Assembly (NCBI GenBank): GCA_037447605.1
Contig: CM074807.1
Location: 3,856,829-3,920,828, forward strand
Direction: 5' to 3'
DNA from: Zygnema circumcarinatum SAG 698-1b
Lineage: Eukaryota; Plantae; Zygnematophyceae
Length of the DNA stretch: 64,000 nucleotides
Shown: positions 20,921-54,094 of the stretch, piece by piece
How positions within the stretch are numbered: the stretch's first letter is position 1
Layout of the letters: every line of letters begins with the position of its first letter
Made by a program: the position numbers and the translations under genes
Notes under the pieces: generated by a model
The model's input: only the letters and a program-made list of their open reading frames with translations
What the model was told of the DNA's origin: nothing
Database searches by the model: none

Positions 20921-23900
20921 TCATCGCCTTGTTATGAAAGGATGCCCTGCAACACAAGTAAAAGAAGTGTAACTTCAGCGAGATGTTCATTAGCACACCT
21001 TATTCCTTCAAAATGAGAGAGAGACAGAGAGTGAGAGAAAGAGGGGGGGGGGGGGGGGGGGGGGGGNNNNNNNNNNGGAGAGGAGAGCGAGAGCGAGAGC
21101 GAGAGGGAGAGAACGAGAGGAGAGAGGGTTGCAGGAGGGGAGAGAGATGGAGCGGGGATAGAGGGAGAGGGAGGGAGAGGAGCGAGGAGAGGAAAGAACC
21201 GACAAGGAGGGAGAGAGAGAGTGGCCAGAGGGAACAATAACGGAGGGCAGAGAGAGTGAGCGAGAGACAGAGAGCGCTCTGGCCCACAGCCTGCCTCCCT
21301 GCCTCCCTGACTGACTGACTGACTGACTGACCGACTAACTGACCGAGTATCTCCTCGGGTGTGATCCGCTTCTTAGGGTCCCTCGTGAGCATCCTCCTGA
21401 CGAGGTCCTTCCCCGCCTCGGAGACTGCCGGCCACGGGCTGCGCGCGAGGTTCAGCTTCCCCTCGCGGATGGCCTCGAATATCCCTTCATTGGAGGCCGC
21501 CCAGAAGGGCGGAATGCCCGACAGGAGGATGTACAGGACCACTCCCGCACTCCATACATCCGCCGCAGGGCCGTACCTCTCCGCCAAAACCTCCGGGGCG
21601 AGGTAGAAGGGGGACCCGGCCATGTCCTTGCAGGGCTTGCCTGCAGCAGCAGCATCATCCCAGAGAGAGGAAGGTTTGTTTATTCTCAGTTATCGTCTTG
21701 GTCTTCTCCTTGCTATTGTGATCGTAATCGTTGTTGTTGTTGTTGATGATGATGATGATATTGTTGCTGTTAATCCCATTGTTCTTGTTGTTGCTACTGA
21801 TCTTGCTGAACTTGCTGATCTTGCTGATGTTGCTATTGTTGCCGATGTTATTGGTAAAGTTGCTGTTTTCGTTTCTATTCTCGTTTGTTGTTTCTCAAGC
21901 AGTCTCAACGCAGCGACGTTGACCTAAATTCGACGTAGTTTAGGTCAAACACGTCACAGACGGACGAAAGACTGACGAAAGCACTCCTATCCCAAAGACT
22001 GACTCCCACTCCCACTCCCTCTCTCCAGATTTTTAGGGTTTGGGTTCAACGATGAGATCGATCACTCACCTTTCTTGAAAAACGCTGCAACTCCGTAGTC
22101 GATCACTTTGATAGTGGTATGGTCCTCCGGACTGCAAAGCAGAATGTTTTCCGGCTTCAAATCGCGGTGCATTACCCCCCGCGAGTGGCAATACCGCAGC
22201 ACCTCCGCAATGGTGCGGCAAACAATGGCGGCTTCCCTCTCCGGATAAAATTTGCGAAGTTTGATGCGATCAAAGAGCTCCCCTCCTTCACACAGCTCCA
22301 TCACCAAATGCACATTCTGCGAGAGTCCTCCCTCTCCCCACACAAGAATAGAATTCAGTAATCTTTGGTATAAGGATGAGCAGTTAGTTTATGAGTTTTA
22401 GTTTATAATATTGTCCTTCTCTTGTTATCAGTCGGACCCACTCTCTGTCATTTCCCCTACGCTCCCGTTTCCCCTTTCAAAAAAGGGAATTGCCACGCAC
22501 AAAACCCTAAAGTAAGTGAAAGAAGGGTATGAAGGGCATTAAGAGCACCTGCGGATCCTCGTATGTGCCCTTAAGATGCACCACATCGGGATGGCCTCTA
22601 AGAAGCTCCATAACTGCGACTTCCCGCCGTACATCCTCTAGGTCTTGAGCACACTGCAAACGCAATTACACACACACACACACACCAATCACTCACACAT
22701 TCTCTCCTTAAAAGATAAACCAAGGAAATTCCCCTCTCTGTCCCCTCCCTCGCTCTCTCCTTCCCTCCCTCTTGTTTTCCCTCTCCCCCTCACTCCCTTC
22801 CCTCCCCACCCTCCCCCACTCCCTCCCCCCCCTTTCCCCTCTCCCCCACCTCTCCCCCACCTCTCCCACCTTCAGCCTACCCTTGCTAATGGACTTGCAG
22901 GCCAGCCTCTCTCCCGCCCTATTCCCTCTCCCCCTCTCTCCCCTCTCCCCCTCACTCCCTTCCCTCCCACCCTCTCCCCCCTCCCTCCCCCCCCCTCCCC
23001 CTCTCTCTCCACTCCCCCTCACTCCCTTCCNNNNNNNNNNCTCCCCCTCTCCCCCACCTCTCCCCCCATCTCTCCCACCTTGAGCCTCCCCTTGCTTATG
23101 GACTTGCAGGCCAGCCTCTCTCCCGTCTGTCGGTGCACGCACACTCGGATGACCCCAAACCTTCCCCTCCCGAGCTCCTGCGCGTACACGTGGAAGTCCT
23201 CATGCACGCTCACAAAGGGCCTTTGTAAAATGTTGACTCCCTTCTCCCTGCTGCGCCCAAAACCCAGCGCACTCCGGATGCCCAAACTTCGTGGTTTGTA
23301 GCTCAGGGCGGAGGCTTGCTCGGGGCTGGCAAGGGGCATAACTGCGGGAGCATGCTTCCTAATGGGAGCGACTTCTATGGGGCTGATGGGGCGAAGGAGA
23401 GGGGGGGGAGAGGGAGAGGGAGGGGGAGGGGAAGGGACGGAAGCTGCTGCAGGAGTGACGTCAGCAGGGAGTGCATCTTCGTCAGGGTCCCCAACAGGAA
23501 TGGCTTGAAAGATACGCCAATGCTTGGGCATGCTGTTCACTGCCGGCTGCGTTTCTCTTTGTGGGTGGGAGTTTTCCTCTCCCCTTCCTTCTCGATACCC
23601 ACCTCCTCCTCCTCCTCCCTGTTGCCGTTTAGGCCCCTGGTAGCTGATAGGCCCCTCTCTCCCACTCCCTCCTCTCTCGATAGGACTCTTCTGTCTCTGC
23701 TGCTCTCTCCCTTCCCCGACCTCCTCCTCCTCTCCAAGGATGAGCTTGCGCCCTACAGAAAACCTTACTACAGAAGCACGTTCTGCATCAGGGGTTTCGT
23801 CTACTGCATACCTTTGCACCTCCCCCCTCCTCCCTCTCTGCCCCTCTCGGCCTCTCACTGTCTCTGTGTCTTCTTGAAGTTGCTCCCTCTCAGGATGCAG

Positions 23901-28864: not shown

Positions 28865-29709
28865 CAGGCCTCTTCAAATAGGGGAGATCCCCTAAATATC
28901 GTAAATAGCTTATTTATGTAAGATTTTGAGATTAGTTTACGTGATTTCAACTTAAATACCACACAAGCCCCAAAAAAGCATTTTTTTGGTTAAAAACAAA
29001 AAGGAAATGAATTGCAGTTGCAACCACGATAGCAATGATGTATATGAACTTTACTTGTTGGTATAACAACACGGCTTTAGAAACTGGTGCAACCTCTTTG
29101 ACTCTTATAGATTGGTAAATTTTACCAATCAATTAGAACAACTGTGCATTTGGCAATCACAACATATAGTTGCTTATTCAAAAACCCAATTGCACTGAAA
29201 CTTTGTAGATCCAATCCTAAGCTCTCTATTTCCTTTTCCATCCATCATTAATTACTCCAAGTATCACTTTAGAATCCATCATAGTCTTGAAATTTCCTCA
29301 CAAAAACTCTATTCCAAATCATTACCTCTGAAATTCAAGGTGTAGTCACAAAAGAAAAACTGAAATAGGAACTAAAATTAGAAATGAAATGAAAAATGGT
29401 CTCACTCCCTTAGGAGTTTTAGGCTGATCAAGACAGCTATAGAAGTGATGCAAACTACTCAAAGAGACCNNNNNNNNNNAATGAAAAGTCTGTCAACCTC
29501 TTTCGAAACTCGTCTTTCTCCCATCCAATTACTGAAAAATCAGACTCGACGGTAGCAATGTTGGGAAATGATGAAGCAAGGTCTCCACAAAATTCTCGTC
29601 CGTACGTGTACCGTTTCGTCCGTACAGTCCATATTTACGTGTTTTTACAAAACCAAGTTAGGGGACAGTCCCCTATCTTAAGCCGAAATCCCCTATTTGA
29701 AGAGGCCTG
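28865..29709 (-). mobile_element. hAT transposon internal-deletion derivative nested in the MITE
   Basis: Perfect 21-bp TIR CAGGCCTCTTCAAATAGGGGA and perfect 8-bp TSD GTCTTTGG (28857-28864 and 29710-29717). Carries a transposase remnant and an N gap at 29470-29479. Confidence 0.93.
29480..29598 (-). pseudogene. hAT-like transposase C-terminal (dimerisation-region) remnant
   Basis: Reads REFCGDLASSFPNIATVESDFSVIGWEKDEFRKRLTDFS up to the gap, inside TIRs with an 8-bp TSD. The family match is recalled, not searched. Confidence 0.7.
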
Positions 29710-33088: not shown

Positions 33089-36000
33089 AAGAGTGAGAGA
33101 GAGAGAGGTGGGCAGTTGTGTTGTACTGCTTTTGCATATGCTGTTTCCAATCAAATTTTCAAACTGTTTTCAATCAATCAGGGAGTTGTTTCAGTTAGCC
33201 ACACATCAATCAGCTTGGACAGCGAGAGAGGCTTCTTGAAAACTTGCAAAAGTAGAAAAAGTTGAGGATACATACCGACACACCGATCAATGCTCCCCCC
33301 CCGCCCGGATCATTTTCCAGCATGTTTCGGCATTTTGAATGGCGTTGGAGCAGATGCCTCACCAAAACTAGCACTGCACAAAATACCGAACACAATCAGT
33401 ACATGATCTCTCCAACCAACCCTTTCAATGGTTCAAAATAACCGTTTGACGGCGCGTTCCCCCTACAGATCGACTACACCTTCTAGTCAACCAGCCCACT
33501 ATTCATTTAGCTAAAAAGACAAGGGAAAACATCACCCTCAGTTTTGACCTCGTAGCTCACACCAAACAGCCATCTGAACTTCCGTCCCATCTAGCACCCC
33601 CCAATACCTCCCTTACATTATCCTCAGCAAAAGTGCTGCAAAGTGGCTGCTCCGTCACAACATCCCTACCCCAATGTTCAGTAGACTTGCAGTAGACTAC
33701 TTTACTACTCTACTTTACTTTCAGTAGACTTGTCCCCCCAGCTTGAGTGTAGGAGAGGAGGACCCCTTACCCGCCATAGCTCTGCCTGAGTCGAAATGCA
33801 GAGCAGCCGCCGCCAGTCTCTTCACAAAAGCTGCACATCTTTGCAGGTCCGTCTGCCTCCCCTCCCACAGCATGGCCTGCAAAGCCTCTGCCAGCACTTC
33901 ATAGCCGCTGCATCCACAACTTTTTTCATACAGGATTCAGCATGCTGAAGTGGATCATATCATGTTTGTGCAAAATCATGCTATTGCAGCTAGGTAACAT
34001 AGTCATACAGGATTCAGCATGCTGAAGTATGCTGTAGGATCATATCATGTTTGTGCAAAATCATCCTATTGCAGGGTAGGTAACATAGTCCGTTTCTGAC
34101 TCCATCTCTACTGCCTGCCACATCCTAGAACAAACGACCAACATTGGTCTGAATGATACATATGGACACCAAGAAACACGAACCAATCAGTGAAAGAATA
34201 TCTTTTATTCCTTTAATTGTAGCTTCTACAACTCAAACATATGTATGGAACACGCAATCACCACAAGCTTTTCGTTTCATAAAATCAAGACAAAACAACA
34301 AGCTGCCTACCTTCATCCTGCAACAGTTTTCCATTTCACTGCATGCTGAGGATGTACAAACCTGTTCACTAATGGAGCCTCCAGCAGCAAAGCATAGAGC
34401 TGCTTGTAAAACTCCCGGAGGTCGACATTCAGAGCATCCATATTGCTTTTCACAATGCGAAATGCGACCAGACAGCAACCCAGCCTCTCCTCAACAGAAA
34501 GCTCCTCCTCCTCCTCCTCCTCCTCCTCCTCCTCCTCCTTCTCCTTCCCATCCCCCTCCAAAGGTTGCCCATCGCTCGTTTCGAGAACTGATAACCTTCC
34601 TTTCGCCAATCTTCTCAACACCTCCAAAATATCAGCCATGAAGTCAACACTGACAAGATGCGAGAACTTGGATAGCCCCTCCAAAGTAGTTTTTAGCAAT
34701 GGACGGGGGCCGAGATGAGCTGCTCCTGATCCATCTGCTAGACTGCATAAAAGCAGCAATCGTGGTTCATTCAAAATAAGGATTAAAAGTAAGTCATCAC
34801 CATGCAATGCATCGCATTTTCTAGTCTATTTTTCCCTCGGTTTCAGCCCCATATATGAAACGCAAGTACTGTATTGCTCTAAGACTGGACGTATTACACT
34901 AAATATGCGTGCATTATCCCAGGACCTGTCTTGAAGAATGCAGACAACTCTCCTTGAAATGTGTATTTTTTTTCCAAGACTTTCAATGGGCAAGTTGTCA
35001 AAACTAAAAGCTTCTATATTTGCTCACATCATGGAAGTTGGCAAAAGGCTAGTTTTGAGGACACGGAAATATGTCTCAAAAACGGCAGTCAAAACTGCAG
35101 CTTGTGCCTGCTTGCGCTGCGATGCATCTGCCACCGCTTGAGACTCGAGAAAATCAGATGCAACCTGCAACCCCCTCTCATCCAACATCCCTTCATCAAA
35201 CATGAACGGCTATGTCGATAAAGAACATGCACTGAAAGGAGCTGCACATGCAAACTTAACCATAGTAGTCACCTTTGTAGTCTTATTAATCACGTTTCAG
35301 AGTAATAAGCTTAGAATAAGCTTAGCTATAGCGACGGAAACTTTTGACCTCTAACCACTCCAACACCACTCAAACAAATCTGTTTCCTGACAAACTCACC
35401 TCCTTATGGAGCTTGGAAGAAAGTCGTTTTTTCTCAATTTTGCGCTGCCGTTTGGACATGAGAGTGAGAGAGTTTTTTACATCTGCTGACATTTCCGGAG
35501 TTCCTGCATTGCGACCCCCCCCCTTCCCCTTCTTTCTGCCCCCTTTGGCCGATTTGTCGCCATCTGATCCTGAAGCACGCCCCAAGTCTTCATCAAATCG
35601 CAGCTGCAGGAACACCTGCAAAAAAAGGCAAGGTTGCAATTGGAGTAAAGTGAGTACAACTGCATGGGTGAATGAATGGTCCAATGAAAATGAATGGTTC
35701 AAGGCATTTTGGATCCATTCTGCTACCATAACAACTCCTAGCGCAAAAGCTTGGCGGCTATGTGCTATATGTTTAAGCTCTAATGTGTCTAAATAGAGCG
35801 TAGCCAACGAGAGCTGAAAGGTGGTGTACAGATCGTTTAGGAAGGAAAACAAAAGGTGCAAATTCAACGGCATCAGATTTCTTGTATAGCAGGCGAAAGG
35901 CAGAGAGGTGGCACTCTCCTAGCAGCCGGCAACAAGCACATACTTGGAAACTCTCTCCTCCTACATGCACTTCTGTCAAAAAACTAGCTCGGGTATCGTA

Positions 36001-39000
36001 GGTTGTCAGTTTCCTTCAGTCTTGCAAACCAGAGTGTTGTTTCAGAATTCATTGATGAGAGACTATTCTAGCATAGGGTTCATCTTTCCGGAAAATAGTG
36101 CATACCTCCACTGCTTGTGGGCGGACCATGCAATGTCGCTGCCTGACAAGATCTGCAATGAGCTGCACAACCTCTGCGGTAGCCTCTCCTCCATGGCGGC
36201 TCTCTCGCGCAAAAACTTCCTTCACAGCATTGCAGCATATGCAGCTGCACCGTTGAATTGAAATGACGGGAGCATATCCCCTTAACTGGATCAGAAAAGG
36301 AACCCTTCCATGCACTTTCTGAACTTTCGTCCCACTCTTTTCCCTCCCTCTCCCATCTCTCTGAGCTCCTCCTCTATTCCCCGACCTTCCATTGTCCCCT
36401 TAACTGGATCAGAAAAGGAACCCTTCCAGGCAGTTTCTGAACTTTCATCCCACTCTTTTCCCACTCTCTCCCATCTCTCTGAGCTCGTCCTCTCTTCCCC
36501 GATCTTCCATCACCCTATATAGACGCCACTCATTTCTCTGACGGGTCTACTCAACTCTCACTTCCCTCAGCTCTCTAACATCATATGACCTTCCCGTTTG
36601 ACTCCATTAAGGCTTAAAGATCGGGTAGGAGGGCTTGTGCTCTAACCCATAAAGCTCTAAAACAGTATAGCTTGCTAGAAAAAGGAGTAAGCATTCCCCT
36701 TTCACATTGAACATTGCAAGAAGATTCAGTGGCTTTGCCTGCAGCTTACTCCTTACCTGACCTCATTGTCGGCTGCATCCATTCGTGGAATAAGAGCACC
36801 AAGCAAACTTGTCCGAAAATTGAAGTGAGGTGCAGCTGCCAGTAATTGGCCCATGCATCGCAGGGCCAATACTCGCTTGGACGGCACCTTGGCCGCCTTC
36901 ATCAGCCACTGAACATACATCTGCACAAGGGCTAGCGCACAAATAACCCCAAGGTACAAACGATACGGATGAATGCCTTAACAAGAAACGGCTCTTACAT
37001 GTTAGAGACGGCTTCCCATCGAAAAGTAATCTCCCAGTGTAAACAAAAAGGGATGGGAAGGCAAAGCTAACCGCAAACCGGTTCACTAAATCTCAAGTAT
37101 CACAGCAGGAATTCCGTATAATGCCAGTAGTGAAGCAGTTTGGGTGGTCTTTGTATGACTTTTCTGCAACTTTGCTTCACCCACCTGATACGCACGCAGG
37201 AGTGCCGCTTCATATTCGCGAAGTTTTCGGACTTCCTTAGAGACTGCCATAGCAGCTTCTTTGCCTGTGGGCAAACGAATTCGATATCCAGGCAGAATGT
37301 CTTTGAACACAGCAGCCAATGAAAGAACTGCAAGAGAGACCACCATATCATCGGCGTCTTCACACATTTCCTGCACAAAGATCGGAGAGTCATTAGAACA
37401 TGCAGATCAACCCACCAAGATACAGTTAGGACCAGCAAGACCTGATACACAATAGAGTGAGGTGCTGCAAACGCACATATGGAGCGAGACGCTCATATAG
37501 ACATCTAATTGGATTTGCTACAACAATGAGGAAAGAATGAAACAAAAAAAAAAAATGAAACAATGAGGAAAGTGTTAGGGTTCTTCAGCAAAACTGATAG
37601 TGAAAAGTTGAAATATTTATCACCTGAAGTTCCTTCAAGTGTCCAATGTGGGTTTCAGGGTCTGTCAGGAGAGCTGTTCCAAGCTCTGCCATTCGCAGCC
37701 TCGACTTTTCTCGTCTTTTTTCCACACTAATCTCCTGCTCCAGCTCCTTCTCAACAGCAGCCTGCCAATCCGACTTGCACAAAAAATAAGATACAGTAAA
37801 GGAATTTCCCAATATACAGACATTCACCATGTTAGTTGCAGTTGCCATAGACTCAAAGTTTCACACAAGCATCCACAGATTCTGCGTTCTGAGTTCTGAG
37901 TTCCTGTGCTATACGTTTATTGCACATTCATGACTTACCAATTCCTGATGCCTAGAAGTCTCAAAGGCATCACCTTTGTCCTCCTCCTGGTCCAGCGTCC
38001 CATTCTCGGTCCTTTTCTTCCTGAGCTCCTTCAGTTTTCGCTTCTCTTCCTTGCGCAGCTTCTTTGTGGGTTGTCCTTGTGCAGGTTCTTCCTCTTCTGC
38101 AGTTGCATGGTCAACTTCTGCACTTTCTTTGCCTCTTAGGACAGCTCGGCGCTCCTCAAGTGTCGCAGGACCGTCTCCTGCAAATCGGAATAAAGGCTGT
38201 CAATAAGCATTATTGACAACGTAAGCATTCTGCACAGACCCCAGGTCCCCTATGAAGTAAAAACAAGTCTTTCAAACAGAGAGGATGGAAAAGAGCTCTA
38301 AACAACACTCCTGCATAAGTGAAACTATATTTGCATTCAACCAGAAACCTAGTTATCATTTGAACACAGAGCCAGCTATGGTCTCCGCAAATCGACTAAT
38401 AACCTGGCAAAGCTATCAGATCAATGCACACAGATCGAAGGTTATTGACGCTAAAAGTTTGAGCTTGTCAAACCTAACGCATGGCTATTTGGTTTTGTAC
38501 TCAATACGGCAACTTGCTACATAATCCACTATGCAATTCAACACCCCAAAATCAAACTCAGACTGAACGCATCAAAAGCCGTCCACGGCCTACAACATCA
38601 GAGAATGCAGAAATATGTCAAAAAAAAAAAACTAGAAGAATAATCTCGGAGTAAGAACCTATCACATATTGCTCGTCCAACTATGCATCCCCCTATATGG
38701 AAGAAAGGGGTGGGGGCGAGGGATCTTGGCATTAAGTTACATATGTGATGTTGCCTGCCATAGAGGCAACATTCACAGTCACCGAATACACAGGACATGT
38801 CACTAAACTTTCCGACTCCCAATACTCAAAGAAGGGTCAACAGCATGTTCCAAGCCAAGACAAGCGCTTCACCGACAAGGACAAGACCATCTCACGATGA
38901 CGATCACCTTCTACCAAGCTAATCATGGCCACATAGGCAAAGTCCCACCTTGCTCGTCAGTAAATATCTGGCGTCCGTACACAAGCTTTCCATCCAAAGT

Positions 39001-46565: not shown

Positions 46566-48044
46566 TTACTCTGTCTTCTGCTCGACTTGTCCTGCATGGC
46601 AGACAATAAGCATAGCGCACAAGGGTTCAACGAGCAGGAAATGCATGCATTTGTAAGACATATTATACAACAAAGCAGTAAGACGATGCTATCTATAGTG
46701 GCAGAAGCTCTAGGAGGGCCAACCTTACTTACGATGATAGCGTAATTGCAGTTATGTTAATGTTTCAGAACAAGCTTTCCTTTCCAGAATCATTTTGCAT
46801 AGCTTCAAAACAGAAACGACAGGAGTAAAACGCAGGCGGAGACTGCCAACCTTTGAACATGCGAGATTGGTCGCCTACTTTCTCGTACACTTTTGTGCGA
46901 AGCTGCAGGCCTCTCGGGCGGATGAAATTAAGGTAAAGATAGAGAGCTCCACGAAATTGTGGCAGAACCAACCAAGCCACAAATACGAGTTTCAAAGTAT
47001 AGTAAAGGGGAATCCTGCCACGACATTTGCCACGAATCAGTTAAGTATGCATCATTCTCAAACCACGTCTCTCCCACAAGTAAAGCACCATCAAGCACAG
47101 TATGTAAAACAAACAAGTTCGACTCTGGCTTCAGACATTGCAGAAAGCTGAATCGATTAGGAAAGCTCATTACCAAGCAACGATGGGCTGTGCAAAAATC
47201 TCAAAGAGTTGAAGGAGGGAGTTGATGACCCTGCCACAACGTTTGCCACGAATCAGTAAAGCATGCATCAGTCCCCAATCACGTCTCTCCCACAACTAAA
47301 GCACCATGAAGCATAGTATGTAAAACAAACAAGTCCTACTCTCGCTTCAGGTATTGCAAAAAGCTGAATCGAGTACCAGTAGGTCAACCACTGCTTGTCA
47401 TCGTCAGGGCTTGGCGACTCCAGGGCCTCAAATGAAGCAGCTCTGAAAAAACAAAACAAAACAGAGCACAAGCCGTCAGAAAAAATTCAGCATTCGCACG
47501 TTTCGGCCAGCAAAGTCCTAAAAGCCAGCTTTTCAAAGTAGTACCCTTACACCCAGAACTATGGAAGGATACATAATAATTGTCCGGGGCTGAAAAGTTG
47601 TCGAGACTTACGCTGGATACAGAATCGTTAGAATAGGCCTGCAAAGGAAAAGCCAGAAGAGTCGTCAGTCAGGAAAGAAACGTCAGAATCGGCAACTGGA
47701 CCGACTTCAGCACCACCCGCCATAAGTAAAGTTACTCTAAAAAAAGTAAAAAGTTGAACTGAAGTAACTCTCAATTAATTCATTTTTTGATGTAAAACGA
47801 GGCAATTCCAAGGTTAATGCTCCATAAGCGATTGCAGCCGCATGAACCCTGGCTCGGAGCTTTCCGAAAAAAAAAACATTTCAGAACTGAAAAGTGTTGA
47901 CCGTCTCCAAGTCACTCCTTTGCGTACACAGCAACGCAACCACCGCAACAGCGCTTTGAGTAACGTTGAGGACCTTTACCCGAGGAACTTGAAGGCGGTG
48001 GTGAGAATCGGGTACACCGGGACGGGCACACTTCCGTTTGCCAT
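46566..48044 (-). CDS. HVA22: HVA22-like (TB2/DP1/REEP) protein, 134 aa
   Basis: Exons 48044-47980, 47638-47612, 47442-47377, 47230-47174, 47014-46851 and 46591-46566 total 405 nt. Product: GPILTILYP...[10 protein letters not shown]...[24 protein letters not shown]. Confidence 0.93.
47015..47372 (-). repeat. Homologous adjacent introns 3 and 4 of HVA22
   Basis: 47231-47372 versus 47015-47156: 125/142 identical by hand count, ungapped, both ending at the acceptor AG. Confidence 0.93.
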
Positions 48045-48109
48045 GGCTGCCTCCTGTGCACCTCAATACTCTCCTTTTTCCTTCTCTCTCTCTCTCTCCC
48101 TCTCTCTGT

Positions 48110-48154
<45 letters not shown>

Positions 48155-48269
48155 CTCTTCTGTCGACTGAGCAAGCAAGCAAGCAAGCAGGACCAACTGG
48201 TGCTCTCCGCCCCTTCTTGTACGGCCCGCAAGTGCGCCTCGCTGGCGCCGCCAGGTCCAATCCCTTTCT

Positions 48270-48418
48270 GCCACGTGCGCGCTCCAGTCAAAGGAGGCCA
48301 CGCAGCCCCGCCACGTGGCCGCGTCCCCGAGCGCTTGGAGGTTAACGGCAGTCCTTGCCACGTCATCGAGCCGTCTGGGCGCGCCATGTGGCGGGGCCAC
48401 CGCCCAGCCCCACGTGGC
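48270..48418 (-). promoter_or_regulatory. ABRE/G-box cluster upstream of HVA22
   Basis: ACGTGGC cores at 48270-48276, 48310-48319 (palindromic), 48357-48363 and 48412-48418, plus GCCACCG (CE1-like) at 48396. Confidence 0.6.
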
Positions 48419-49475
48419 AGCCTCCCCGGATCGCCAGGGTGCTGCCCGATATATCGTCCGGTATCGAAAATGCGATGGTTGGTGGTCCGATGCGATGGGA
48501 CCCCATGGCCATGGGAGGGTGCCGTACAACGAACTATACGGATCGTTCCCTTAAGGGAGGCAACGATGAAGCGGAAGTGGGGAGGTTACATTATGGGTTG
48601 CCACATACTGAACCTTGCTTTGTGTTGGAGGGGGAGCAGCTTGGGTGGTTCAACGGGGCTTATTGGGATGACACTTTTCTTCCTTTTCTCGTCATATAAT
48701 TCTGTGTACTCGGGCTGCTATATTTAGGTTTTACTAAAGGTAAACCATCGGTCAAGGGCAGAATACAGCAATTAAGAAACTTGGTTCTTGAACCAGTCTT
48801 GACAAAAGCACGGTTAAAACGAACTTTGAACTGGACAGAACAGAGCAGAACACCTTCATAAGAAGAGAGGTGTAGCGGTCTCAAGCAGCAGACAATCTCA
48901 TTAACTTCACAGAAAATAGATTGAATAATGAAAGCACTCGACCAACAGAGTGAACGTGTGCGATAGGCTCGAGGAGTCCTTGCAAACGTTTTTCAGCACG
49001 TTAAAAGTCACCGCTAATGCGAATTCATCAAAGAGGAGAAGCGCGGTCACAGGTACATGCTTGAGGTGTCGAGAGAAAGGTCAACACCCGCCATGGCTGC
49101 CGAGCTAAGAAAGCCCATGACCGCGTACAACAAATACGTAACTCTAGTTGCAAATGAGAGATAGGGAGTATACCAGGCAGCAGTGCCTCGTACTATACTC
49201 ATTCAAAAAACTCGGTGGCAAATCCTGAACTTTTCCTCAGAGAGTCTCATCCTCGCCTGAAGCGCATTATGTCTCATACCATAACGAGAACCCGCGGCAA
49301 ATTGCAATGGTCGAACTTCAAGGAAGAAACCATCAGCCTGCTTCGCCACTAGACAAAAGAAGTCGAGAGTTTCACTGTACACATTCCAATGACCAACGTG
49401 GCCAAAAAAATAAGTGGAAAGAGCAGCTATGACTTTACTACTTTAAACTCTACTATTCTTTTTAAACCTTTAAAT

Positions 49476-52210: not shown

Positions 52211-52585
52211 TATAGATCCGTATTATACACTTTGAGGTTCGATACAATGTATAATACAGTATTAATACTGTATTATACACTGTATAATACCTTAACGCAA
52301 CTGTTAACAGCCGTACAATCGGAACATAGACCCGTACGGAAATTATGTACGGAATGCGTGTACGAACGTGTACGGACCAAGTCACACGTGTTGAGTGTTT
52401 GGCAAGTGACGTGACTTGGCAAGTTCTGGAATTTCAATATTATAATCAAATTTTGTTCAACTAACCACGAAAATAAAAAAAATACGTTAAATACATTAAA
52501 AATACACTGTATTTTTAAAATGTTGTATAATACGCATGTATTATACAGTGTATTAATACACGCGTTTGATACATACGGATCTATA
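52211..52585. mobile_element. 375-bp hAT-like MITE, intact (copy 1)
   Basis: 13-bp TIR TATAGATCCGTAT/ATACGGATCTATA, perfect 8-bp TSD GTGAACAC (52203-52210 and 52586-52593), AT-rich with internal palindromes. Confidence 0.92.
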
Positions 52586-52812: not shown

Positions 52813-53191
52813 GTATTATACAGTTTGAGGTTCGATACAATGTATAATACAGTATTAATACTGTATTATACATTGTACAATACCTTAACGCAACTGTTAA
52901 CAGCCGTACAATCGGAACATAGATCCGTACGGAAATTATGTACGGAAGAGATGTACGGAAGTGGTGTACGAACATGCACGGACCAAGTCACACGTGTTGA
53001 GTGTTTGGAAAGTGGCGTGACTTGGCAAGTGCTGGAATTTCAATATTATAATCAGATTTTGTTCAACTAACCACGAAAATAAAAAAAATACGTTAAATAC
53101 ATTAAAAATACATTGTATTTTTAAAATGTTATATAATACGCATGTATTATACAGTGTATTAATACACGCGTTTGATACATACGGATCTATA
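52813..53191. mobile_element. Second copy of the same MITE, left TIR deleted
   Basis: Near-identical to copy 1 in the same orientation. Right TIR intact and followed by CCCCCAAC; the left end begins 9 nt into the TIR. Confidence 0.92.
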
Positions 53192-53281: not shown

Positions 53282-53464
53282 ATTGGGTCGTCGAATGAGT
53301 AACTACATGTTGAGATTGCCAGATGGACGAGTGTTCTAATCCCATGTATGAGAGTTGACGAGTTTGCACTAGTTTCTAAAGCCGTGTTGTTACACCAACA
53401 AGTGGAGTTCATGTACATATGATGACATCGCTATACAGTAGTCAGTGCAAATGCAATTCATTTC
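53282..53464 (+). mobile_element. Decayed fragment homologous to the 3' internal region of the hAT element at 28865-29709
   Basis: Matches the reverse complement of 29004-29190. Core 53371-53403 versus 29053-29085 is 32/33 identical. Confidence 0.8.
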
Positions 53465-54094
53465 ACTTTTCACTTTCTTGTACGGTCCTCCCTCCATCCG
53501 TACGCCTTGATGTCGGCGTCCCGGCCTCAAATGGATGGATAGGTAAATTCCCAAACAAATTCGATTTTTGTGACATTATGGTAGCGTGATCTATTTCCAT
53601 TCCAGGCCCCCTCCCTCCCTGTCCCCCCGTCGAGGTCCAATGCGCGCGCCGCCTCGCACGTGTGATGACTCCCCCGCGCCCCTCAAGCCCCTCCCGCCGC
53701 AGCCGTGGCCAGCGTGCCACGTGGCGTATCCCTCCACAGCCATTGCTGCCACGTGCCCACGCAGGCCACGCCCCCCCCCTTGGCGCCAGTGGCCGTCGTC
53801 CGCCGTCCGATCTTGCCCCCCGCACTGATCTGGCGCCGCTGGCCACATCCCAGCCGTCCAAATCGACGGGGAGGGCCAACGCTTGGAGGGAGCCCTCCCC
53901 TCCCAGCTCGCGCCGCCCTCTCTATAGGGGAGAGTCTGCATCAACCGGTGGTCTTTGAGAGGGAGGCATTTGGAAGCTGGTGGGAAGAGGGGGCTGAAGG
54001 GGAGAGAGGGATAGGCGAGGAAAGGGACAGGCAGAGAGAGGAAGAGAAAGAGGGAGTGGGAGAGAGATAGAGGGCGGGGGGAGGGTCGGAGGAT

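What the first reader, a model, noticed from the sequence alone, without database searches (positions are those of the whole stretch)
47015..47376. Two neighbouring HVA22 introns are copies of each other, but the exon between them is unique
Seen: intron 3 (47231-47376) and intron 4 (47015-47173) are 88% identical over 142 ungapped nt. The match covers almost all of intron 3 and ends exactly at both acceptor AGs. Both introns are phase 2 in a Trp codon (TG|G). The 57-nt exon between them is not repeated. Inference: plain tandem duplication cannot give this. It looks like intron replacement (a conversion or template switch anchored on the GCAG|G junction) or repeated insertion of an introner-like element. 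From memory these intron positions are old in HVA22 genes, which favours replacement.
Basis: partly seen in the sequence, partly recalled or inferred. Interest (0 to 1): 0.75.

Follow-up and report, generated by a model that had tools for sequence, protein, structure and literature searches.

The report
Neighbouring intron copied into an exon
In a stress-protein gene (HVA22) of a green alga close to land plants, one intron is an end-to-end copy of the next, older intron and splits an exon that land plants keep whole, so it looks like a fairly recent intron gain by copying, a rarely caught event.

Summary
On the minus strand, intron 3 (47231-47376, 146 nt) and intron 4 (47015-47173, 159 nt) of an HVA22/TB2/DP1 gene align from GT to AG. 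They match at 128 of 146 positions, with one 13-nt gap just behind the 5' splice site. The flanking exons match only at random level, and the 64-kb window holds no third copy.

I threaded three land-plant HVA22 proteins exactly onto their genomic loci (pineapple, Striga, Sphagnum). All three have exons of 47, 27 and 123 nt. The alga has 65, 27, then 66 + 57 = 123 nt. So the intron-4 site is shared and old. The intron-3 site, in the Trp codon of WLTYW, is missing in all three.

Best reading: intron 3 was gained by copying the whole of intron 4 into a TG^G site 57 nt upstream. The element has no terminal inverted repeats, no target-site duplication above 2 nt, no unusual fold and no Rfam match. 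That argues against a transposon-type introner.

Three things could not be done: a genome-wide copy count, an algal outgroup locus, and RNA evidence from the same organism. This is a rare but described kind of event, with earlier cases in Oikopleura and in fungi. The scan had not noted it elsewhere.

The parts
47980..48044 (-). HVA22 exon 1 (65 nt, ATG at 48044-48042); ends in phase 2
   Evidence: Sequence reading. The intron phase and position match land-plant exon 1.
47612..47638 (-). Exon 2, 27 nt
   Evidence: Same 27-nt exon as in pineapple, Striga and Sphagnum. Its peptide aligns to relatives.
47377..47442 (-). Exon 3, 66 nt; ends with TG of the Trp codon in WLTYW
   Evidence: Pfam PF03134 match; 18/21 residues identical to P0007.
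47231..47376 (-). Intron 3, 146 nt, GTACTC...GGCAG; the probable new copy, at a site absent from land-plant HVA22
   Evidence: homology to intron 4; site absent in three land plants. Read-through meets a stop after 40 codons.
47174..47230 (-). Exon 4, 57 nt, unique; with exon 3 it equals the 123-nt exon of land plants
47015..47173 (-). Intron 4, 159 nt, GTAATG...GGCAG; old site (phase 2 in the Trp codon before IPxYY); the probable source copy
   Evidence: site conserved. Read-through gives an immediate TAA stop.
47160..47172 (-). 13 nt present only in intron 4, just behind the 5' splice site; bounded by a TAAT direct repeat, and its exact placement can shift by up to 2 nt
   Evidence: Global alignment with several equally good gap placements; sequence reading.
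46851..47014 (-). Exon 5, 164 nt, the core of the TB2/DP1/HVA22 domain
   Evidence: Pfam E = 4e-11. The 3' boundary after FK|G is supported by the same intron site in L010 and by the C-terminus of P0007.
46566..46591 (-). Exon 6 (encodes GQVEQKTE, stop at 46568-46566); intron 5 is 46592-46850
   Evidence: Sequence reading; the ...KTE end is shared with P0007.

Best explanation
Intron 3 is a fairly recent gain. The whole of the neighbouring, ancient intron 4, from GT to AG, was copied into the Trp codon TG^G of WLTYW, 57 nt upstream in the same gene. This split an ancestral 123-nt exon into 66 + 57 nt. The copy brought its own donor, branch-point region (the conserved ACTGATTCG block about 25 nt before the AG) and acceptor, so it could be spliced at once. 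Since then the two copies have diverged by about 12%, and one 13-nt indel arose next to the donor.

Shown: the end-to-end homology, the unrelated exon flanks, the conserved site of intron 4, and the absence of the intron-3 site from three land plants.

Inferred: the direction of copying and the mechanism. I lean slightly (about 55:45) towards an RNA route over a DNA route. In the RNA route, the excised intron 4 is reverse-spliced into its own transcript, copied into cDNA, and a short patch recombines into the gene. In the DNA route, a break in the exon is repaired by copying the nearby intron, primed on the TG/G microhomology, and selection keeps only the exactly spliceable product. The sequence alone does not separate the two.
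For: Homology covers the whole of intron 3 and stops at both splice junctions. Exon flanks are at random identity. Pineapple, Striga and Sphagnum loci, threaded exactly, have exons 47/27/123, against 65/27/66+57 here. The exon peptides align collinearly, with one split Trp between them, to Zygnematophyceae relatives and to Sphagnum. The intron-4 site is present in a related alga's genomic contig, where the intron sequence is unrelated. It is also present in 45 of 150 representative ORF fragments. The insertion has no target-site duplication: junction ambiguity is 2 nt at most. There are no inverted repeats and no special fold, z about -0.15. Intron 3 has the weaker donor (GTACTC), as reported for young introns (PMC2809761, abstract listed). 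Homologous intron pairs are the accepted indirect evidence for intron transposition (PMC3443670).
Against: No genomic locus from another streptophyte or green alga could be obtained. With land plants alone as comparison, one gain in the alga's line and one loss in the land-plant ancestor are equally parsimonious by position; only the 88% identity argues for recency. Ongoing gene conversion between the two direct repeats could make an old pair look young. Genome-wide copy number is unknown. No transcript of this gene from the same organism was found, so splicing of both introns is inferred from homology and from stops in the read-through.
Confidence: 0.6

Rival explanations
1. Replacement: both intron sites are old in this lineage, and the sequence of one intron was overwritten by the other. 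This could happen by reverse splicing into the spliced junction followed by cDNA recombination, or by a template switch anchored on GCAG|G.
For: Both junctions share the TG|G context and the GGCAG|G acceptor. Without an algal outgroup, loss of the intron-3 site in the land-plant ancestor cannot be excluded (searches cover land plants only). The review read (PMC3443670) says most suspected reverse-splicing events in fungi were at sites that already held an intron.
Against: The intron-3 site is absent in all three land-plant loci examined, while the other three shared sites are kept. Replacement needs exact removal of an old intron plus exact insertion of the new one. The flanking exons offer no homology for ordinary gene conversion.
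Confidence: 0.15
2. Introner-like element: a mobile, intron-generating sequence family inserted independently at both sites, or inserted at site 3 and into the old intron 4.
For: The unit is a whole spliceable intron with its own signals. Introners are known mainly from algae and other fast-evolving protists (PMC9860276).
Against: The 64-kb window holds only two copies. A 20-mer from the best-conserved block gave only two chance matches in the metagenome contigs. There are no terminal inverted repeats, no target-site duplication, and no stable fold like that of fungal introner-like elements. One of the two sites is ancient, so it did not arise by insertion.
Confidence: 0.12
3. Shared function: both introns host paralogous copies of a small RNA (snoRNA or miRNA) or a splicing-control element, and constraint keeps them alike.
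For: There are perfectly conserved blocks of 16-20 nt.
Against: No Rfam match reaches even E = 1 inside the introns. The folds are no better than shuffled sequence. The 18 differences are spread along the whole length. A hosted RNA would not explain homology that ends exactly at both splice sites.
Confidence: 0.03
4. Two-step DNA route: tandem duplication of [57-nt exon piece + intron 4] (216 nt), followed by exact deletion of the first exon copy.
For: The period is 216 = 57 + 159 nt. Short tandem duplications of about 80-200 nt occur three more times in this window.
Against: It needs an exact 57-nt deletion as a second event, and no trace of a second exon-4 copy remains. The 216-nt period follows trivially from two copies that end at their acceptors.
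Confidence: 0.04

Closest known systems
Intron transposition, i.e. duplication of a pre-existing intron. The review PMC3443670 cites Oikopleura dioica and Mycosphaerella. From my own memory, not read here: the Drosophila Xdh intron (Tarrio et al. 1998) and Caenorhabditis novel introns similar to other introns of the same gene (Coghlan and Wolfe 2004).
   Same: A new intron is homologous over its full length to another spliceosomal intron, here one in the same gene. It sits at a site that lacks an intron in relatives, and it has no transposon hallmarks.
   Different: This case lies in the plant lineage (a conjugating green alga), where I know of no described example. The source intron is the immediate neighbour, 57 nt away. 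The recipient and source sites share the TG|G Trp-codon context. The polarity rests on land plants only.
Introners and introner-like elements (Micromonas, Aureococcus, fungi, many protists; PMC9860276, PMC3609843)
   Same: The repeated unit is a complete, spliceable intron.
   Different: Those families have tens to thousands of copies, often with terminal inverted repeats and target-site duplications, or with stable folds in fungi. Here only two copies are seen and none of those hallmarks is present.
Intron gain by tandem genomic duplication of an exonic AGGT segment (PMC3265369, PMC4974935)
   Same: A local duplication creates an intron without changing the mRNA.
   Different: In that mechanism the new intron is a copy of adjacent exon sequence. 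Here the intron matches another intron, and the exon between the two is unique.
[quoted passage not shown]
   Same: Insertion into an exon with very short microhomology at the junctions, here TG and G.
   Different: Inserts in Daphnia are of unrelated or unknown origin and have short direct repeats. Here the insert is an exact whole intron from 57 nt downstream.

Membership tests
HVA22 / TB2 / DP1 (REEP-Yop1) gene family | Match to Pfam PF03134 above the curated cut-off | tested here: met
   Exon 5 alone scores 43.1 bits against a cut-off of 27.2, E = 4e-11. Exon 3 gives a further partial match. All exons align collinearly to HVA22 proteins.
Intron transposition / intron duplication | The new intron is homologous over its full length, donor to acceptor, to another spliceosomal intron, and the homology does not extend into the exons | tested here: met
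   128/146 identical with one 13-nt gap; exon flanks 10/30 and 8/30 identical.
Intron transposition / intron duplication | The recipient site has no intron in relatives and outgroups, while the source site is older | tested here: inconclusive
   The intron-3 site is absent in pineapple, Striga and Sphagnum. The intron-4 site is present there, in a related alga's contig and in 45/150 ORF fragments.
Intron transposition / intron duplication | An RNA intermediate (reverse splicing plus reverse transcription) | not testable with these tools
   Sequence alone does not separate this from DNA-templated break repair.
Introner / introner-like element | Many near-identical copies across the genome, each forming an intron | tested here: inconclusive
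   Two copies in 64 kb. The metagenome 20-mer scan gave chance hits only. Look-ups in the scan's own notes were blank. The whole genome could not be searched.
Introner / introner-like element | Transposon hallmarks (terminal inverted repeats, target-site duplication) or, in fungi, a stable predicted fold | tested here: not met
   No inverted repeats; junction ambiguity of 2 nt at most; fold z-scores -0.16 and -0.13.
Intron gain by tandem duplication of an exonic AGGT segment | The intron sequence duplicates adjacent exon sequence | tested here: not met
   Neither intron resembles any exon of the gene, and exon 4 is unique.
Intron-hosted small RNA paralogues | Match to a known RNA family, or a fold better than shuffled sequence | tested here: not met
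   No credible Rfam match; folds are ordinary.

The most novel reading that the evidence does not exclude
A caught-in-the-act case of RNA-mediated intron transposition in the plant lineage: the lariat of the ancient intron 4 reverse-spliced into its own transcript at a matching TG^G site 57 nt upstream and was fixed in the genome. Source and copy are still 88% identical and the polarity is known. If sister strains or species differ in having the intron, this would be a natural system for studying how spliceosomal introns spread.
Probability: 0.3. Interest if true: 0.7.

Novelty: new member of a known kind. Interest (0 to 1): 0.5.

Why it matters
How new spliceosomal introns arise is a long-standing open question. 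Intron transposition is the most often cited mechanism, yet it has never been shown in vivo. The 2012 review read counted only 14 unambiguous indirect cases, in Mycosphaerella fungi and the tunicate Oikopleura. Here source and copy lie side by side, the source site is demonstrably ancient, and the recipient site is intact in land plants, so the case is unusually easy to read. It lies in the algal group closest to land plants, and land plants themselves show no introners. If related strains or species are polymorphic for intron 3, the event could be dated and the RNA and DNA routes could be told apart.

A side consequence: the two direct repeats flank a 57-nt exon bounded by two phase-2 introns. 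Skipping that exon, or losing it by recombination between the repeats, would leave the reading frame intact and rebuild a TGG codon.

Tried and rejected
- **Same-organism transcript or protein.** Word searches with the stop-to-stop ORF around exon 5 and with the closest full-length relative P0007 found none. The closest hits are metatranscriptome or RNA-seq contigs of other algae, which carry no introns.
- **Spliced protein.** All searches used single exons or ORFs by reference.
- **Algal outgroup loci.** The profile search was swamped by land plants.
- **Other copies of the intron.** The 20-mer scan of metagenome contigs gave two matches of 20-28 nt in AT-rich contigs, which I take as chance. 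The scan's own notes gave nothing by sequence, relatives or words.
- **Tandem duplication.** Rejected, because the exon between the copies is unique and both exon pieces are ancestral family sequence.
- **Small RNA host and MITE.** Rejected.
- **Assembly artefact.** Rejected, because the copies differ at 18 positions and by one indel.
- **Papers not held.** PMC3760481 (Oikopleura) and PMC509176 (Caenorhabditis) could not be read, so those precedents rest on the review and on my memory.

Full report
**What is there.** The region holds a six-exon gene on the minus strand. Exon 1 is 48044-47980, exon 2 is 47638-47612 (27 nt), exon 3 is 47442-47377 (66 nt), exon 4 is 47230-47174 (57 nt), exon 5 is 47014-46851 (164 nt) and exon 6 is 46591-46566. 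Exon 5 alone matches Pfam TB2/DP1/HVA22 (PF03134) at E = 4e-11, above the curated cut-off, and exon 3 adds a partial match. The peptide of each exon, aligned on its own, falls collinearly on the closest relatives, with exactly one split Trp residue between exons 3/4 and 4/5. Reading through intron 3 meets a stop after 40 codons. Reading through intron 4 meets TAA at once. Both introns must therefore be removed to make the domain.

**The observation.** The repeat finder reports 47014-47159 against 47230-47375, 146 nt at 88%. blastn gives 145 nt ungapped at 87.6%, E about 1e-48, and nothing else in the 64-kb window above chance. A window-against-itself comparison confirms this is the only such pair. 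A global alignment shows that all 146 nt of intron 3 align to intron 4, 128 identical, with 10 transitions, 8 transversions and one 13-nt gap directly behind the first one to three bases. In intron 4 the extra 13 nt are bounded by a TAAT direct repeat, the pattern left by a small slippage indel. Homology is thus donor to acceptor in both copies. The 30 nt of exon on either side match at random level, 10/30 and 8/30, and introns 1, 2 and 5 are unrelated. Both introns are phase 2 in a TGG codon.

**Which site is old.** I threaded three land-plant HVA22 proteins exactly onto their genomic loci, so that the CDS translates to the protein with GT-AG introns. Pineapple (L001) has exons 47, 27, 123, 226 and 18 nt. 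Striga (L003) has 47, 27, 123, 193 and 18. The moss Sphagnum (L009) has 47, 27, 123, 250 and 36. The alga has 65, 27, then 66 + 57 = 123. Introns 1, 2 and 4 of the alga therefore sit at the same codon and phase as in land plants. Intron 3 interrupts an exon that is continuous in all three.

A 521-nt metagenome contig from a related alga (L010, found through ORF fragment P0009) also has the intron-4 site (...cag|GATTCC) and the intron-5 site (TTCAAGG|gtgagt), but its intron sequence is unrelated. Among the 150 representative relatives of exon 5, 45 are ORF fragments in which homology begins at Arg-(Ile/Val)-Pro after unrelated residues. That is what read-through of a phase-2 ...AG|G intron at this exact site produces. 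A few of these have the FYYE-type motif, which as far as I know is commoner outside plants, so the site may predate plants.

**What it is.** The simplest account is that the whole of intron 4 was copied into the TG^G of the WLTYW Trp codon, 57 nt upstream, creating intron 3. The copy carried a donor, the conserved ACTGATTCG block about 25 nt before the acceptor (a plausible branch site) and the GGCAG acceptor. Intron 3 has the weaker donor (GTACTC against GTAATG). The insertion left no target-site duplication, since the junctions are ambiguous by at most 2 nt. The region has no inverted repeats. Both introns fold no better than shuffled sequence, z = -0.16 and -0.13. No Rfam family matches credibly.

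These results speak against a cut-and-paste introner, a MITE, a fungal-type introner-like element and a hosted small RNA. A plain tandem duplication is excluded because exon 4 is unique and both exon pieces are ancestral family sequence. A duplication of [exon piece + intron] followed by an exact 57-nt deletion would work but needs two events.

**Mechanism.** Two routes give the same product. In the RNA route, the excised intron 4 reverse-splices into its own transcript, is copied into cDNA, and a short patch recombines into the gene. This gives exact ends for free and explains why source and target are in the same gene. It needs recombination confined to the 66-nt and 57-nt exons, because introns 2 and 4 were kept. 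In the DNA route, a break in the TGG codon is repaired by copying nearby sequence, primed on TG and resolved on G, and selection keeps only the exactly spliceable product. This window does show three other short tandem duplications. I lean slightly to the RNA route but cannot separate the two.

**Limits.** No genomic locus from another alga could be obtained. The Mesotaenium and Spirogloea relatives are held as proteins only. With land plants as the only comparison, gain in the alga's line and loss in the land-plant ancestor are equally parsimonious by position. The case for gain rests on adding the 88% identity and the difficulty of overwriting one intron exactly with another.

The rest of the genome could not be searched. 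A 20-mer from the best-conserved block found only two chance matches in metagenome contigs, and the scan's notes were blank. No transcript of this gene from the same organism turned up.

**Organism.** Earlier notes call this genome a conjugating, streptophyte green alga. The nearest named proteins here are from Mesotaenium and Spirogloea, which fits.

**Comparison with the known.** Homologous intron pairs are the accepted indirect evidence for intron transposition. The review PMC3443670 counts 14 unambiguous events, in Mycosphaerella and Oikopleura, and notes that the process has never been shown in vivo. Cases in Caenorhabditis and in Drosophila Xdh are from my memory; those papers were not held. 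A survey of 3,325 genomes found no introners in land plants (PMC9860276).

**Verdict.** This is a new member of a known, rare kind, in a lineage where I know of no example.

| Reading | Confidence |
|---|---|
| Intron 3 gained as a copy of intron 4 | about 0.6 |
| Replacement at two old sites | 0.15 |
| Introner family | 0.12 |

Interest is 0.5.

Noticed in passing
window 48296-48428: Three 34-nt repeats, each with a CACGTGGC (ABRE/G-box-like) core, lie about 250-380 nt upstream of the HVA22 start codon. This fits an ABA- or stress-inducible HVA22, and another note on this window (s1-393404) has already flagged it.
   Followed up: no
window 48083-48158: A (TC)n/(GA)n microsatellite of about 38 units sits immediately upstream of the HVA22 start codon, probably in the 5' leader.
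   Followed up: no
window 36277-36510, 33926-34090, 22731-23125: Three short head-to-tail duplications: 2 x 116 nt at 93%, 2 x about 80 nt at 87.5%, and 2 x about 195 nt at 78%. Local duplication of 80-200-nt pieces seems common in this stretch, which bears on a DNA-level origin of the intron copy.
   Followed up: partly
window 52220-52585 and 52813-53191: Two copies of a 370-380-nt element at 93% identity, each with a 42-44-nt palindrome (52242-52285, 52836-52877). Another note (s1-393368) calls it a hAT MITE. It is unrelated to the introns.
   Followed up: no
window 53282-53470 and 28999-29190: A dispersed repeat of about 200 nt, inverted, 72% identical; probably an older transposon remnant.
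   Followed up: no
L010:1-521: A metagenome contig (ENA ERZ28595023) carries exon 5 of an HVA22 orthologue from a related alga, about 60% identical in protein. It has the same intron sites on both sides of the exon, but its intron sequences are unrelated.
   Followed up: yes
window 46850-46845: Intron 5 has an unusual donor (GTTGGC). The boundary is supported only by the same site in L010 and by the shared ...KTE C-terminus with P0007. An alternative read-through end 29 codons further on cannot be excluded without RNA data.
   Followed up: partly
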